64,000 nt of DNA from Takakia lepidozioides (Eukaryota > Plantae > Bryophyta). The notes beneath the pieces were generated by a model. The model saw only the letters and a program-made list of their open reading frames with translations, had not been told where the DNA came from and ran no database searches. Made by a program: the position numbers and the translations under genes. This document shows, piece by piece, positions 29,118-53,792 of this stretch. The first letter of the stretch is position 1, and the number at the start of each line of letters is the position of its first letter. The DNA lies in assembly GCA_030704615.1 (NCBI GenBank), contig CM060735.1, forward strand, positions 75,842 to 139,841. Direction: 5' to 3'.

Positions 29118-31189
29118 TCCGTTGAAATTAATAGGACTTAAGTCCTAAGAAAGAGACTTGGCAAGCTCGGGAAAGAAAAAAACCTAAGCTCTCAACGGTT
29201 CTTCGAAAAGCGAAAGTATCTTCGTATCTTATGAAGACGAAGGAGTGTGCGTCTGGGACAGGGTACTTAGTAGATGAATTAGGTGGTAATTTTTCGTTAG
29301 GTGCCCGTGGAAGTTTTGCCTATGATGCTTGTGGCGTTTCTTCCACGGTCATTTGACATACTGATCTCTAGGTTCTTTAGCTTTGTCGCGCAAAGATGCT
29401 TAGCTTTCAACTTGTTGTATTTAGCTTCCGCTACACGCTCATCAGCGTCATCTAGACGTGGCTGTTTATCAGTACTTATTTTTATTTTTTCACTCAACCA
29501 ACAGTTGATTACGAGCCTTAATTTCTTTCATTTCACGCTTTTCAGCCTCTTTCAACAGCTGATCCGCGTTTTTAGCTTTCTCAGTAAGCACCTGATAATC
29601 GAACTTCAGCTTTTCCAACTTTAGGTTCTTTTCTTGCAATTCTAATTTATTCGCCTCATTTAAATTATCCACGTACCCGGGATATGACCAAGTACCCCCC
29701 GCCGCAGTAGACGCGTCTATCGCACTACCAGCTATCTTAACAGCCTCTACAGACAGGGTTTTCCTTCGCGAAGTTACCTGTGAGTTGTTGAACAAAGCTA
29801 GGTGTATCCATAAGTTTTTACTTTTATTTCATCCGGTTCTATGGCGGGATCTGGCAACCACTATATAAATGAATAATCATAAATAGAAATCATCGACAAC
29901 CCTTATAAGTAAGGGGGTCTGCTTTGAGGAAATCGTACCAAATAGGATTCCCATCGTACTAGAAAAAACTGGAAAGACATAATCCAATAACTTAAGTTAA
30001 GGACCTTCCATTAGATAATAAATTTAGATTAAATTTATAAAAAGTTTTTAGAATTCTCATAAATTTTTGCGGTCTTCCACAAGGTTTGCGGGGAGTTGCG
30101 ACCACCGAATTCGCCTCGGAATTTAATTGCCGAATTTTCCAATGATCTGTCCAAGTTGCGGGCAAATATGGGCAAATATCCATAAAATATTTCGCAAACC
30201 TGGCAGATCTTCGCAAAAATGATAGATAATTCTGGAAACTTTGTGTGGTTGTTTATGTAATTTCATTTAAACAACCTTTAATCTACGAAATATTTTAAAC
30301 TCTAAACCTAAGATTCCACAATAAACGAAGATAATAAGATTATGTTTATTTTTCCATCTATGCAATTGGAGGATACACCTTCTTGACCTCTAGACGTTGG
30401 GGATACTGAAGGCCCAGATCCTTACCTACCAGGGTTACTCGTTCTTGTAGGGGTTTTATATATGTGTCTACCTCCCCCTCAGGAAAGGCCGAAATATTCC
30501 CGTCATGAAAATGGGGTCTGGGTTCCACCGCGGGGTTGCTTCGGCTATAATAGCCAACTCGTAGGATTGGAGATACGAGGCGTAGACCGAAGGAAATGCG
30601 GTTTCCGTCACAAGGTAAGTTTGGCCGGGAGGCCCCGTCAACAACTCGTCTTCATATATCTCATATACAGTGTCGGGTACGTTCCGAAGGTCTGGGATTA
30701 TATCCGTCCGTTGGAGCGCACTCACGACTTCCACGGCTCTCTCATATCCCCCTTCATAGTCTGGCAATTCCTTGAATTCATTCATTGTTAACCCAAGGCC
30801 TTTACGTTCAGACTCAAGGATTCCCTGAATAACAGCGTTGTTGCCTTCTCCTGAGTTGCTATTCGAACCAATGTTTTGTGGTAGAAGTTCTCAAAAACTC
30901 TTTTGACAAATCATTGTTCTAGATATTATTTCCAAAGAGAGCCTTTGCTCCAGGTTTCTAATGTAGAAGGGGGGGGGGGGAGAGAACCCTAAAAGAATCG
31001 TAGTATAGCACGATGCTAGGTCCACATCCACGATTCGTTATCCTTCCCCCTTTCCATCAAATAGAACCCACTTCAGTTAAGTACATTTCTCTTATTGCTC
31101 GTTCAACAACCAAGTTAAACGAATCTTTATAACATAACTATTTAGGTACAATACGAGGGCGCAGCTTACTTTTCTTCTTGCCGATTTAA

Positions 31190-32730
31190 CTCTCTAGGTT
31201 GGATTCGAACCAACGACCCAATGGATAGAGTAATCTTTTTGGAAGGATAAGTAATGGGCGGCCTTGGTGTTAGGCGAAGAAGGCTTCAATAATCATACAA
31301 GATACTTGATGAAAGCAAGTCATACATACATTGCGTTCATGTATAACATCGCAGTTATTGAGTCAGACCCACCATCATGATATAATCCTTCAAAACGCTC
31401 CCCTCCGAACCGTGCTTGCAAGATCTCCAAGCACACGGCTCTTGCTCGGTATTCGAAACTAGCATAATTGAACAAATATGATAGATGGTCTTTATCAGCC
31501 AGATTCAACGAAAAAATTTATTTTTTTTTTCTGCTTCTATGAAGACCAAGTTCATACCATGACTGCATAATAATGGTTAAAACACTGATTCCCTTCCAAT
31601 TCATTGTACTATGGAAACTCTGACGCCATTGCTGATGGTTCCGACACTGAGAGCACCAGGCCGCGGAGTGCAGCATATATATATATTTTTTTTCCGACCC
31701 GCCCCCGCTTTGCGGGAACTCTAGGCCCGGATTTACCCACTTTGTTCCCATAGCTCATTCCCGAATGAGAGGCCGAAGGAGGAGGAAAAATATAAATAAT
31801 TAAAGCTCTCTTCCTTAGGGAAAGGGGGCTTTTGGAGAAGAAGCAAGTCCGGGGTTTTGCGGTTTAGGGGCCTTCAGTGCTTAATTAAGCCTGCCAGGGA
31901 GGGCGTTCCTGAATCATCCGAGGAGGTCCTCACTTAGGATCGCTTTAGGTTTAAGTTATTTTTAGTGCTATGGACGAAGCCGCAGGTCAAGCAATCGAAT
32001 GTAGCAAGTTCATCCGCCTACGCGCATAGCTTGATAGCTACAAGCGAGCTAAACACAATGCATCCTGCATCTCGTGGAGAAATCCATGATGAGTGCTTGG
32101 CACGACTGCATCTGTTCCACATGATCAGTATGACTCTCCTGTTAACCGTGAAAAGCATATGTAAGAAACAGAGCCTACAAAGGCTTTGGTTATTTGCTTC
32201 AAGTATAATCAACCTCTTGGAAACCCGATCTATCTAGGTGCAAACAGCCAAACCAATACCATGCTTGCAAGGGAGATTCAAAGTAGCAGATTCTGCAACT
32301 TGTTGATCATTCAGGTTTTAGTGGAAAAACCACTTGGCTTTCATTCAGTTATGCAATAACATAGTAATTAAATGCTACGCCATGGATCTACGTAGATCCA
32401 AGGTTCGGGATTGAACACTACGCGCGCCTTGAAAGAGATGAAAAATCCACACATTGTATGCTCGATAGCTCGACCATGCCGTGCTTACATGGATAGGAGT
32501 CAAAAAAACCCAAATGACTTGCGTTTAACCATAAGGTTTATCCATATGAGGCCTAACTTAGACATAGTCTATAACATCATGCTACGTTTCCTAAATTCGT
32601 TTCCAAATGAAGGTAAGGTATTTTTTTAGACATGCTCTGAACGATGCCACAGTAAAAAGCTAAATCCTGTACCAATATATTCAGCGCACTTAACAGCCGC
32701 CATTTGCTCTAACCGCTGAGCCACTAGAGA
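31190..32730 (-). tRNA. trnN: Intron-split tRNA-Asn (GUU); exons 32730-32690 and 31224-31190; possibly a pseudogene (3-nt duplication in the anticodon arm)
   Basis: Joined exons: TCTCTAG TG GCTC AGCGGTTA GAGC A AATGG[CGG]CT-GTT-AA|CCATT GGGTC GTTGG TTCGAAT CCAAC CTAGAGA G. All stems pair apart from the extra CGG. Confidence 0.88.
31225..32689 (-). mobile_element. Group II intron in trnN(GUU), at tRNA position 38
   Basis: 5' GTGCG, 3' CTCTAT, intact domain V GAGCCGTGTGCTTGGAGATCTTGCAAGCACGGTTC at about 31407-31441. Confidence 0.88.
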
Positions 32731-33489
32731 AGAGGCACAAAAAAAAAATATTTGGCTGCGCTTTGCGCCTTTGGCCATAGGGGCAGGAGTTGTAGTAAAG
32801 GGGTTTGGATTGAATAAAAGAGATAAATGCATCAAGGGCAATGCAGTAACTTGGAGAAGAGAACGAGCCGCCATGCCACCTTTATTCGCCGCCTCGCCCC
32901 ACGCCTCTTGGCGGTTGCAGCGCGCAGGTCGCAGCAAAATATTTCACAAAATATAGAATTTGTTTACTTCTCAATTCCTCGACCAGGAAAATGTAAAGCA
33001 GGACTTGAGTCGTCCGCCCAGCTTATTGTCTAACGCACGTCAGAAAAATATATATAGTTTTTAACCTTTCCTTCTCGTCGCCCCACACCACATTATTGAC
33101 TTCACGAGGGAAGGGCGGGACTTTAGTCCCGGAAAACGTTAGCTTTCCGGGGGTTTCCCCAGCAGAGGTTTACCCGCTTTCTTTGCTTCGCGAAGAAGAG
33201 GGGCAGAGATTGGAAGGGCGCAGCAGAGAAACGCTTCTTATAAAACGCGTACCAAGAAATATTCGTTCTCTTCTCTTCGACCCTTGATTCGCTGCGCGAA
33301 TCAAGTTGGTTCCTGTCCAAATATACGGGTGCCCTCTTTTTCGAAGGTTTATTACACTCGTCGTTGCACCAAAATACATACTTTTTTCATTGTTCACTCC
33401 GTCCCTTCAGAAAACGAAGGTCGTTCCAGAAAATAAAAATATATATTTCTATTTCCGAGCCTCTTCATGGCTTCAGAGAGCTGAAGCCC

Positions 33490-34095
33490 CTAGATATCTC
33501 TTATTTTTTTTATAGTATTCCGAAAATCTATAGCATTTTGTCGAAACACATCCTGTCTTTTGACCCGAGTAGTTTTATGCATAGTAGGTACTATAGCCCC
33601 AATCATGGCTACTAATGAAATAAGACTAGAAACCAAAAACAAAACAAAATAGGTGGTATAAAGTAAATTGCCTAATGTTTCCAAATTAGTCCAACTTTGT
33701 ATCTTTTCAGCATAAACTGTATATGTTGGATAGGTTGTATTCAATTTCGTTGGTAATATTGGAATGTAATCATTATCTACAATGAAAAAAATTTCCAACA
33801 AAAAAATAAGTCCAATAATACCACCCACGGGTAAATAGCGCAATACATTCTCGTGAATTTCTGCTATTTTAATATTTAACATCATAACTACAAATGAAGA
33901 TGAAACGGCAATAGCTCCTACATAAACCACTAAAAAAATCATAGCAGAGGAGTCAGGACCTAACAAAACGAGTAAACCTGAAGTGTTTAAAAAAACTGGG
34001 ATGGAAAATGAAACGGAATGGACTGGATTTTTAGCACGTATCGCCATAACACTAGAGACCGAAGCAATGCTCGGAGAAACAGAAAAAAGTATCGT
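33490..34095 (-). CDS. nad6: NADH dehydrogenase subunit 6 (201 aa; ACG start)
   Basis: AKNPVHSV..VYVGAIAV..VMMLN..NLETLGNLLYT..VAMIGAIV. Frame extends to ACG ATA CTT TTT at 34095. Confidence 0.96.
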   Translation of the reverse strand, partial: TILFSVSPSIASVSSVMAIRAKNPVHSVSFSIPVFLNTSGLLVLLGPDSSAMIFLVVYVGAIAVSSSFVVMMLNIKIAEIHENVLRYLPVGGIIGLIFLLEIFFIVDNDYIPILPTKLNTTYPTYTVYAEKIQSWTNLETLGNLLYTTYFVLFLVSSLISLVAMIGAIVPTMHKTTRVKRQDVFRQNAIDFRNTIKKIRDI

Positions 34096-53606: not shown

Positions 53607-53686
53607 GCTCACTTGGTGAAAATGGTAAACACGACAGACTTAAAATCTGTTCCTATGGGTTATCGGTTCAAGTCCGATAGTGAGCA
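53607..53686 (+). tRNA. trnL: tRNA-Leu (UAA)
   Basis: GCTCACT/AGTGAGC acceptor, ACAGA-CTTAAAA-TCTGT, long variable arm. Confidence 0.93.
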
Positions 53687-53687
53687 T

Positions 53688-53767
53688 ACTCGCTTGGTGG
53701 AAATGGTAGACACGACAGTCTCAAAATTTGTTCCTATGGGTTATCGGTTCGAATCCGATAGCGAGTA
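53688..53767 (+). tRNA. trnL: tRNA-Leu (CAA)
   Basis: ACTCGCT/AGCGAGT acceptor, ACAGT-CTCAAAA-TTTGT; near copy of the preceding tRNA. Confidence 0.9.
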
Positions 53768-53792
53768 TCTTAATGTCTGAATTGGGAGGAAG

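What the first reader, a model, noticed from the sequence alone, without database searches (positions are those of the whole stretch)
31190..32730. Hidden tRNA-Asn(GUU) split by a 1.46-kb group II intron between nad6 and cox2
Seen: two tRNA halves 1465 nt apart join into a cloverleaf with perfect acceptor, D and T stems, anticodon GUU and discriminator G. The intervening sequence starts GTGCG, ends CTCTAT and has an intact domain V. Discounting a 3-nt duplication, the intron sits after tRNA position 38. Established, from recall: a trnN-GUU group II intron at this position occurs in charophyte algal mitochondria such as Chara, while typical moss mitogenomes such as Physcomitrium lack trnN. Inference: this is an algal-era relic kept in an early land-plant lineage, easily missed by tRNA finders.
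Basis: partly seen in the sequence, partly recalled or inferred. Interest (0 to 1): 0.85.

Follow-up and report, generated by a model that had tools for sequence, protein, structure and literature searches.

The report
Fossil intron-split mitochondrial tRNA-Asn gene
This moss-type mitochondrial genome keeps an almost complete copy of an ancient algal asparagine-tRNA gene split by a self-splicing-type intron, but a 3-base duplication in the anticodon loop probably kills it, and such relics in mosses were already reported in 2023.

Summary
On the minus strand a 41-nt 5' exon (32730-32690) and a 35-nt 3' exon (31224-31190) flank a 1465-nt group II intron (32689-31225). The intron starts GTGCG, has domain V and a bulged A in domain VI, and ends CTCTAT.

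It is the orthologue of the charophyte intron trnN-GUUi38g2. Chara/Nitella-type contigs carry an intact trnN-GUU with a 605-644-nt intron at the same site and in the same gene order. The intron's core blocks are conserved with the window (domain V 33/35).

The exons give perfect stems, but a tandem GGC duplication makes the anticodon loop 10 nt instead of 7. The gene is therefore most likely a well-preserved pseudogene.

Its good state does not show recent function. This lineage changes slowly, and the exons changed about as fast as the intron.

No RNA evidence for splicing could be obtained.

What this copy adds:
- It is the most complete of the four moss-type copies compared here.
- It lacks the disabling exon substitutions that the other sampled mosses share.

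The scan found this element before on another piece of the same genome (s1-451688). Interest is low to moderate.

The parts
32690..32730 (-). trnN(GUU) 5' exon, 41 nt: acceptor 5' strand, D arm, anticodon stem 5' strand AATGG, then CGGCTGTTAA. The anticodon GTT is at 32694-32692.
   Evidence: It matches the Chara/Nitella-type 5' exon at 36 of 38 positions, plus a 3-nt insertion.
32696..32701 (-). GGCGGC, a tandem duplication of GGC at the junction of anticodon stem and loop. The extra 3 nt make the loop 10 nt instead of 7.
   Evidence: It is absent from the algal orthologues L121 and L122 and from the moss-like relics L118 and L124. It is present in DNA contigs of runs X1 and X2 with no variant.
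31225..32689 (-). Group II intron, orthologue of trnN-GUUi38g2, 1465 nt, with no reverse-transcriptase ORF. It is about 860 nt longer than the algal versions because of insertions in domain I, the domain II-IV region and the domain VI loop.
32685..32689 (-). Intron 5' end GTGCG.
   Evidence: The algal orthologues have the same 5' end.
32139..32145 (-). Candidate EBS1, TTAACAG, complementary to the last 7 exon bases CTGTTAA. The preceding G (32146) could pair with the first base of the 3' exon.
   Evidence: Read. The block is conserved in algae (GTTAACAGGAGA). Its role is inferred.
31407..31441 (-). Domain V, 35 nt, with the AGC triad, a 2-nt bulge (AA) and a GAGA loop closed by G-U.
   Evidence: Rfam RF00029 scores 46.5 bits. 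It matches the algal domain V at 33 of 35 positions, including the unusual UU/UU upper helix.
31228..31403 (-). Domain VI. The basal helix is GGGGAGC / GATT-A-CTC, with a bulged A at 31231, 7 nt from the intron end. There is one G x A mismatch and an insertion of about 140 nt in the loop.
   Evidence: The insertion is shared with the moss-like contig L118. The Rfam placement of domain VI, ending at 31357, lies inside this insertion.
31190..31224 (-). trnN(GUU) 3' exon: anticodon stem 3' strand CCATT, variable loop GGGTC, T arm, acceptor 3' strand and discriminator G.
   Evidence: It matches the algal 3' exon at 33 of 35 positions, and both differences turn G-U pairs into Watson-Crick pairs.
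33490..34047 (-). nad6, the upstream neighbour.
   Evidence: Pfam PF00499, E = 2.3e-26.
23415..27089 (-). cox2 exons with an intron that carries reverse-transcriptase remnants; the downstream neighbour.
   Evidence: Pfam PF02790, PF00116 and PF00078.

Best explanation
This is the vertically inherited orthologue of the streptophyte mitochondrial gene trnN(GUU) with its group II intron trnN-GUUi38g2. It sits at the ancestral position between nad6 and cox2.

In the working algal gene the intron would fold through domains I-VI. It would pair its EBS1 loop with the last exon bases CUGUUAA, use the bulged A of domain VI to attack the 5' splice site, and join the exons into a 73-nt tRNA-Asn.

Here every recognisable part of that machinery survives: the 5' GUGCG, the candidate EBS1, domain V, the branch A and the 3' AU. 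All four tRNA stems survive too. However, a tandem GGC duplication at the edge of the anticodon stem enlarges the anticodon loop from 7 to 10 nt. It also moves the presumed IBS2 three bases away from IBS1.

The gene is therefore most likely a non-functional fossil, and tRNA-Asn would be imported from the cytosol as in other mosses. It looks so complete because this lineage's mitochondrial DNA changes very slowly.

Shown: the anatomy, the orthology, the synteny and the duplication.
Inferred: loss of function, import of tRNA-Asn, and the roles assigned to EBS1 and the branch A.
For: Orthology:
- The Chara/Nitella-type loci L121, L122 and L123 have the gene order atp6(-) nad6 trnN cox2 cox3 nad1(-), as in the window.
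- Each carries an intact split trnN with the intron after the same base.
- Conserved blocks against the window: 5' exon plus the start of domain I 77-79%, EBS1 block 83-85%, domain V block 93%, 3' end plus exon 93%.
- The nad6 protein of L122 is identical to that of Chara vulgaris.
- The literature names the intron and reports pseudogenised copies in mosses (PMC10012718 supplements; PMC3814193).

Defect:
- The GGC duplication is unique to this copy and is present in two DNA data sets.
- The classic cloverleaf then has a 10-nt loop. The only 7-nt-loop alternative needs a G-U-rich, mismatched anticodon stem and either a 4-nt connector or a broken D arm.

Slow clock:
- Only 4 of 172 algal-alignable intron columns (2.3%) are changed specifically in this lineage. 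The exons carry 2-4 lineage-specific changes in 73 nt, so they show no excess conservation.

Related moss-like contigs (L077, L118, L124) hold clearly decayed copies.
Against: - All 21 stem pairs and all tertiary-contact bases are intact.
- The two stem substitutions relative to algae both preserve pairing (G-U to G-C and U-G to U-A). Under neutrality this is mildly unexpected; my rough estimate is about 0.05-0.1.
- The intron core shows no clear lethal lesion. Its odd domain V is the ancestral functional form.
- No RNA data were available, so neither splicing nor its absence is shown.
- The effect of a 10-nt loop is assumed from general tRNA knowledge and was not tested.
Confidence: 0.8

Rival explanations
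1. The gene is still functional. The intron splices, and the tRNA works despite the duplication. One route would be a shifted anticodon stem (GGCGG/CCAUU) with a normal 7-nt loop CUGUUAA, whose C x A mismatch is repaired by C-to-U RNA editing.
For: - The stems, the tertiary bases, the discriminator G and the intron core motifs are all perfect.
- The stem substitutions preserve pairing.
- With a C-to-U change, the shifted register is as stable as the 10-nt-loop register (-21.2 against -21.1 kcal/mol).
- ARAGORN still calls the joined exons Asn(gtt).
Against: - The shifted register leaves 4 nt instead of 1 between the D stem and the anticodon stem, or breaks the D arm. I know of no such plant mitochondrial tRNA.
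- The exons evolve no more slowly than the intron in this lineage.
- Other mosses do without this gene (PMC1894977 Table 2).
- No transcript or splice joint was seen, although the RNA data were nearly empty.
Confidence: 0.12
2. The gene stayed functional in this lineage long after the other mosses lost theirs, and the GGC duplication killed it only recently. On this reading the pseudogenisations were parallel, not a single loss in the moss ancestor.
For: - Five 5'-exon substitutions shared by L077 and L118 are absent here, where the bases match the algae. They include ones that break the D stem and the anticodon stem. L124 carries most of them.
- The duplication is the only obvious lesion here.
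Against: - With about 2-4% lineage-specific divergence, only 2-3 neutral hits are expected in 73 nt. Intact stems do not require selection.
- The relationship of the metagenome contigs to this organism is assumed, not shown.
- The timing cannot be fixed from these few sequences.
Confidence: 0.35
3. It is a chance cloverleaf around an unrelated, independently inserted intron fossil.
For: ARAGORN with long introns allowed gives about 0.1 false split tRNAs per shuffled 64-kb window.
Against: - The exons are 94-95% identical to algal trnN.
- The insertion site and the synteny are identical.
- The intron blocks are conserved.
- The published alignments agree.
Confidence: 0.01

Closest known systems
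trnN-GUUi38g2 in Charophyceae (Nitella hyalina in PMC10012718 Fig. S3N; called trnN(guu)_37 in Turmel et al. 2013, PMC3814193; Chara/Nitella-type contigs L121-L123 here)
   Same: Same host gene, same insertion site, same neighbours (nad6 upstream, cox2 downstream), same 5' end GTGCGC, same EBS1 block, same unusual domain V and the same D6 branch-A context.
   Different: - The algal introns are 605-644 nt, against 1465 nt here.
- The algal exons have a normal 7-nt anticodon loop; here a GGC duplication gives 10 nt.
- The algal tRNA has two G-U pairs where this copy has Watson-Crick pairs.
Pseudogenised trnN-GUUi38g2 remnants in other mosses (Physcomitrium patens spacer, PMC10012718 Fig. S3N; moss-like contigs L077, L118, L124)
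   Same: Same locus downstream of nad6. About 75-79% identity over the flank, the 5' exon and the 5' half of the intron. The D6-loop insertion is shared with L118.
   Different: - The other copies are clearly decayed: broken acceptor, D and anticodon stems, and GTGTA or GTGCA intron starts in L118 and L124.
- L077 has lost the 3' intron part and the 3' exon, and L118 has an internal deletion and a decayed domain V.
- This copy keeps both exons and the whole intron core and has its own private lesion.
trnS-GCUi43g2 fossil in the trnS-GCU pseudogene of mosses and Phlegmariurus (PMC10012718, family F24)
   Same: It is also an algal-era group II intron in a mitochondrial tRNA gene, retained as a decaying pseudogene in a conserved moss spacer.
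   Different: Different tRNA, different insertion site (after position 43), different spacer (trnA-trnD) and a different intron family. trnN-GUUi38g2 is listed there as a solitary intron.
Plastid tRNA genes with group II introns in the anticodon loop (for example trnK-UUU i37 with matK)
   Same: A group II intron lies in the anticodon loop of an organellar tRNA gene and is missed by default tRNA finders.
   Different: These are plastid genes, functional and universally annotated, and trnK carries a maturase ORF. There is no sequence relationship.

Membership tests
trnN-GUUi38g2 (streptophyte mitochondrial group II intron in trnN-GUU) | The host gene is trnN with anticodon GUU. | tested here: met
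   The exons match the Chara/Nitella-type trnN exons at 36/38 and 33/35 positions. Anticodon GTT is at 32694-32692 and the discriminator is G. ARAGORN calls the joined exons Asn(gtt).
trnN-GUUi38g2 (streptophyte mitochondrial group II intron in trnN-GUU) | The intron is inserted between tRNA positions 38 and 39. | tested here: met
   ...CTGTTAA|GTGCG and CTCTAT|CCATT in the window correspond to ...CTGTTAA|GTGCG and CCCTAT|CTATT in the algae. Linear numbering is shifted by the 3-nt duplication upstream.
trnN-GUUi38g2 (streptophyte mitochondrial group II intron in trnN-GUU) | The intron sequence is homologous to the algal orthologues. | tested here: met
   Five collinear BLASTN blocks at 77-93% identity, with domain V at 33/35. 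This agrees with the published Nitella alignment.
trnN-GUUi38g2 (streptophyte mitochondrial group II intron in trnN-GUU) | Conserved genomic position. | tested here: met
   atp6, nad6, trnN, cox2, cox3 and nad1 are in the same order and orientation in the window and in L121-L123. The Phlegmariurus relic is 3.9 kb from cox2.
Group II intron (catalytically competent) | 5' GUGYG, domain V with the AGC triad and bulge, domain VI with a bulged A 7-8 nt from a 3' AY end, and EBS1-IBS1 pairing. | tested here: met
   GTGCG is present. Rfam RF00029 scores 46.5 bits, above the 40-bit gathering score. The bulged A is at 31231. TTAACAG pairs with CTGTTAA over 7 bp. One G x A mismatch lies in the basal D6 helix.
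Group II intron (catalytically competent) | Splicing observed in RNA. | tested here: inconclusive
   No joint was seen in the contigs of two putative RNA runs. Those runs hold almost none of the stretch, and the matching pieces look like paralogues.
Functional elongator tRNA gene | A 7-nt anticodon loop on a 5-bp stem, with one base between the D stem and the anticodon stem. | tested here: not met
   The loop is 10 nt (CGGCTGTTAA) in the register with Watson-Crick pairs. The 7-nt alternative needs two or three G-U pairs, a C x A mismatch, and a 4-nt connector or a broken D arm.
Functional elongator tRNA gene | Intact acceptor, D and T arms and conserved tertiary bases. | tested here: met
   7/7, 4/4 and 5/5 pairs. 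U8, A14, G18G19, A21, G15-C48, G53-C61 and the T-loop TTCGAAT are present.
Functional elongator tRNA gene | A mature, CCA-tailed, aminoacylated product. | not testable with these tools
   No small-RNA or tRNA sequencing data were on hand.

The most novel reading that the evidence does not exclude
In this early-diverging moss lineage the intron still splices and yields a working or regulatory tRNA-Asn-like RNA with an abnormal anticodon arm, possibly rescued by C-to-U editing. That would make it the only land plant outside liverworts with a native mitochondrial trnN, and the only one that still uses the algal trnN intron.
Probability: 0.1. Interest if true: 0.55.

Novelty: already known. Interest (0 to 1): 0.25.

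Why it matters
The finding shows that intron-split organellar tRNA genes escape default annotation.

This copy is the most complete of the moss-type trnN-GUUi38g2 remnants compared here. It keeps both exons, the whole catalytic core and the ancestral synteny. That makes it a good reference for three tasks:
- tracing how the gene decayed in land plants;
- polarising changes in the other, more eroded moss copies;
- dating the loss of mitochondrial trnN and the switch to imported tRNA-Asn.

The absence here of the disabling substitutions shared by the other sampled mosses suggests that exon decay in those mosses began after they split from this lineage.

None of this changes current concepts. The intron, its algal origin and its pseudogenised state in mosses are published.

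Tried and rejected
1. Degenerate domain V. Domain V has a UU/UU upper helix and no plain GNRA tetraloop, unlike the 12 other domain V hairpins in the window. I first took this as a sign of decay. I rejected that reading because the intact Chara/Nitella-type genes have the same domain V (33/35 identical), and the AA bulge also occurs in a cox2 intron of this window.

2. Rfam's placement of domain VI, ending at 31357, would leave 130 nt between the intron and the exon. I rejected it. The real domain VI base and branch A align with the algal 3' end next to the exon, and the extra sequence is a loop insertion shared with L118.

3. Perfect stems as proof of long purifying selection. This is not supported, because lineage-specific change is only about 2% in alignable intron columns and the exons are no slower.

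4. RNA evidence. The two putative RNA runs gave only short, 90-96% identical paralogue-like pieces and no joints.

5. The metagenome pattern scan gave 120 loci, of which only 2 were homologous.

6. Other nad6-anchored loci were of little use:
- L125-L127 end just after nad6.
- L128 has no trnN in the spacer.
- L129 has an unrelated intronless trnN-GUU.

7. I searched papers for a description of this copy in Takakia mitochondria and found none.

8. No database search was made with the joined exons. Exons and intron were searched unspliced or by reference. The joined form was only folded and scanned locally inside scripts.

Full report
**What is there**

Reading the minus strand, the sequence TCTCTAG TG GCTC AGCGGTTA GAGC A AATGG CGGCTGTTAA (32730-32690) is followed directly by GTGCGCTGAAT.... 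After 1465 nt...GATTACTCTAT (ending at 31225) is followed by CCATT GGGTC GTTGG TTCGAAT CCAAC CTAGAGA G (31224-31190).

The acceptor (7 bp), D (4 bp), anticodon (5 bp) and T (5 bp) stems are all Watson-Crick. The usual tertiary bases are present.

- ARAGORN in default mode does not report the gene.
- With introns allowed it reports exactly one split tRNA in the 64-kb window, this one.
- It names the gene Arg only because it places the intron boundaries arbitrarily.
- Shuffled windows give about 0.1 such calls per window. The cloverleaf alone is suggestive, not decisive.

Rfam finds a group II domain V/VI match inside the gap (31357-31443, minus strand, 46.5 bits, gathering score 40).

The neighbours are nad6 (34047-33490) upstream and cox2, cox3 and nad1 downstream, all on the minus strand. 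atp6 lies on the plus strand beyond nad6.

**Orthology**

I used the nad6 protein to find relatives and fetched their contigs. This gave three Charales-type mitochondrial loci, L121, L122 and L123; L123 is identical to L122 over the gene. The nad6 protein of L122 is identical to that of Chara vulgaris.

All three loci have the gene order atp6(-) nad6 [gap] cox2 cox3 nad1(-). In the gap each has an intact trnN-GUU split by a 605-644-nt group II intron at the same base...AAATGGCTGTTAA|GTGCGCC...CCCTAT|CTATTGGG....

Five collinear blocks align with the window:
- 5' exon plus the start of domain I;
- the block holding GTTAACAGGAGA, the candidate EBS1, complementary to the exon end CTGTTAA;
- a block in the domain II-IV region;
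- domain V (33/35 identical);
- the domain VI 3' strand plus the 3' exon.

The window's intron is about 860 nt longer. The extra sequence lies in insertions between these blocks, including about 140 nt in the domain VI loop. Independent insertion and chance are therefore excluded.

**What is wrong with the gene**

Against the algal exons the window has four substitutions:
- position 9, A to G;
- position 16, T to C;
- position 40, T to C;
- position 70, G to A.

It also has one tandem duplication, GGC to GGCGGC (32701-32696).

None of the substitutions breaks a pair, and two of them convert G-U to Watson-Crick. The duplication, however, leaves a 10-nt loop on the native anticodon stem.

The only way to restore the 7-nt loop CUGUUAA is a shifted stem GGCGG/CCAUU. 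That stem has a C x A mismatch and two G-U pairs, and it needs either four bases between the D and anticodon stems or a broken D arm.

The duplication is not an assembly slip. Contigs of two DNA runs from different studies match the window without any difference over all 1731 bases laid. One of those runs may be the source of the assembly.

In the intron I found only one small blemish, a G x A mismatch in the basal domain VI helix. My first impression that domain V is degenerate was wrong, because the intact algal genes have the same unusual domain V.

**Other mosses**

A pattern scan of metagenome contigs and one nad6-anchored contig gave three moss-like copies:
- L077 has the nad6 end, a decayed 5' exon and the 5' 600 nt of the intron. 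The rest is deleted. It has its own ACTG duplication in the same loop.
- L118 has both exons decayed, a GTGTA intron start, an internal deletion and a decayed domain V.
- L124 has a decayed 5' exon and a GTGCA intron start.

L077 and L118 share five 5'-exon substitutions that the window lacks, among them changes that break the D stem and the anticodon stem. L124 carries most of them. At those positions the window agrees with the algae. None of the three has the GGC duplication.

**Does the good preservation mean function?**

I polarised changes with the algal sequences:
- Only 4 of 172 reliably aligned intron columns changed specifically in this lineage.
- 7 changed on the stem of the other mosses.
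- About 7 changed on each of their tips.

Scaling to the flanks gives roughly 2-4% lineage-specific divergence. That predicts 2-3 neutral hits in a 73-nt tRNA. Two to four are seen, plus the duplication.

The exons therefore evolve no more slowly than the intron, and a slow clock is enough to explain the intact look. The fact that both stem hits preserve pairing is a weak hint of past constraint; my rough estimate is 0.05-0.1 by chance. This leaves room for a late, independent death of the gene, but does not show it.

**RNA**

No holder of the stretch is on record as RNA. Two putative RNA runs of the same species label gave only short paralogue-like pieces and no joint. Splicing and expression remain untested.

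**Literature**

- Turmel et al. 2013 (PMC3814193) list trnN(guu)_37 among the few group II sites conserved between charophyte groups.
- Table 2 of PMC1894977 shows trnN(guu) present in Chara and Marchantia and absent in Physcomitrella.
- Zumkeller and Knoop 2023 (PMC10012718) name the intron trnN-GUUi38g2. [quoted passage not shown] Their Fig. S3N aligns Nitella with the Physcomitrium and Phlegmariurus remnants.

The published Nitella and Physcomitrium sequences agree with what I see in L121/L122 and L077.

**Organism**

The names of the sequencing runs were coded. I confirmed its literature claim, but I did not verify the species myself.

What I can say is that the best nad6 matches are mosses at no more than 90% identity, and that the locus is 75-79% identical to moss-like contigs.

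**Verdict**

- The gene is probably a pseudogene (about 0.8).
- The kind of element is already known.
- This copy is the best-preserved moss example I could compare and is useful as a reference, but it is not a conceptual novelty.

The joined exons were not sent to any search; they were only folded and scanned locally in scripts.

Noticed in passing
window 28567-28827 (-): A 260-nt copy of the 3' end of the large-subunit rRNA (Rfam LSU model positions 2653-2912, 154 bits) lies in the trnN-cox2 spacer, far from the complete rrnL at 59252-62945.
   Followed up: no
window 25434-26644 (-): Two ORFs with weak reverse-transcriptase (RVT_1) matches lie in different frames inside the cox2 intron region. 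They look like a broken intron maturase.
   Followed up: no
L077, about 935-985 of the reverse complement: The decayed trnN remnant of another moss-like contig has its own 4-nt tandem duplication (ACTGACTG) at the same edge of the anticodon loop where this window has GGCGGC. The site may be prone to slippage.
   Followed up: partly
window 31184-31264 and 32705-32761 (run X9): Contigs of a putative RNA run of the same species label match short parts of the locus at about 96% and then run into unrelated sequence. One covers the 3' exon plus the last 40 nt of the intron. The other covers the 5' flank plus the first 26 nt of the 5' exon, at high depth. These may be partial second copies (nuclear or recombined) or paralogous tRNAs.
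   Followed up: no
window 53607-53867 (+): trnL-UAA and trnL-CAA abut with no spacer (53686/53687). trnH-GUG follows 24 nt later.
   Followed up: no
window 60275-60503 (-): A group I intron (Rfam RF00028, 59.8 bits) lies inside the mitochondrial large-subunit rRNA gene. Another note of the scan also flagged it.
   Followed up: no
L129 12790-12861: An unidentified 124-kb mitochondrial contig has an intronless trnN-GUU of quite different sequence at the same nad6-cox2 position. The position of trnN is therefore older than the intron, or the intron was lost there.
   Followed up: partly
L121 10770-10840 and L122 8560-8630: The algal trnN introns carry a GC-rich palindromic insert in domain I that differs in length between the two algae and is absent from all moss copies.
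   Followed up: no
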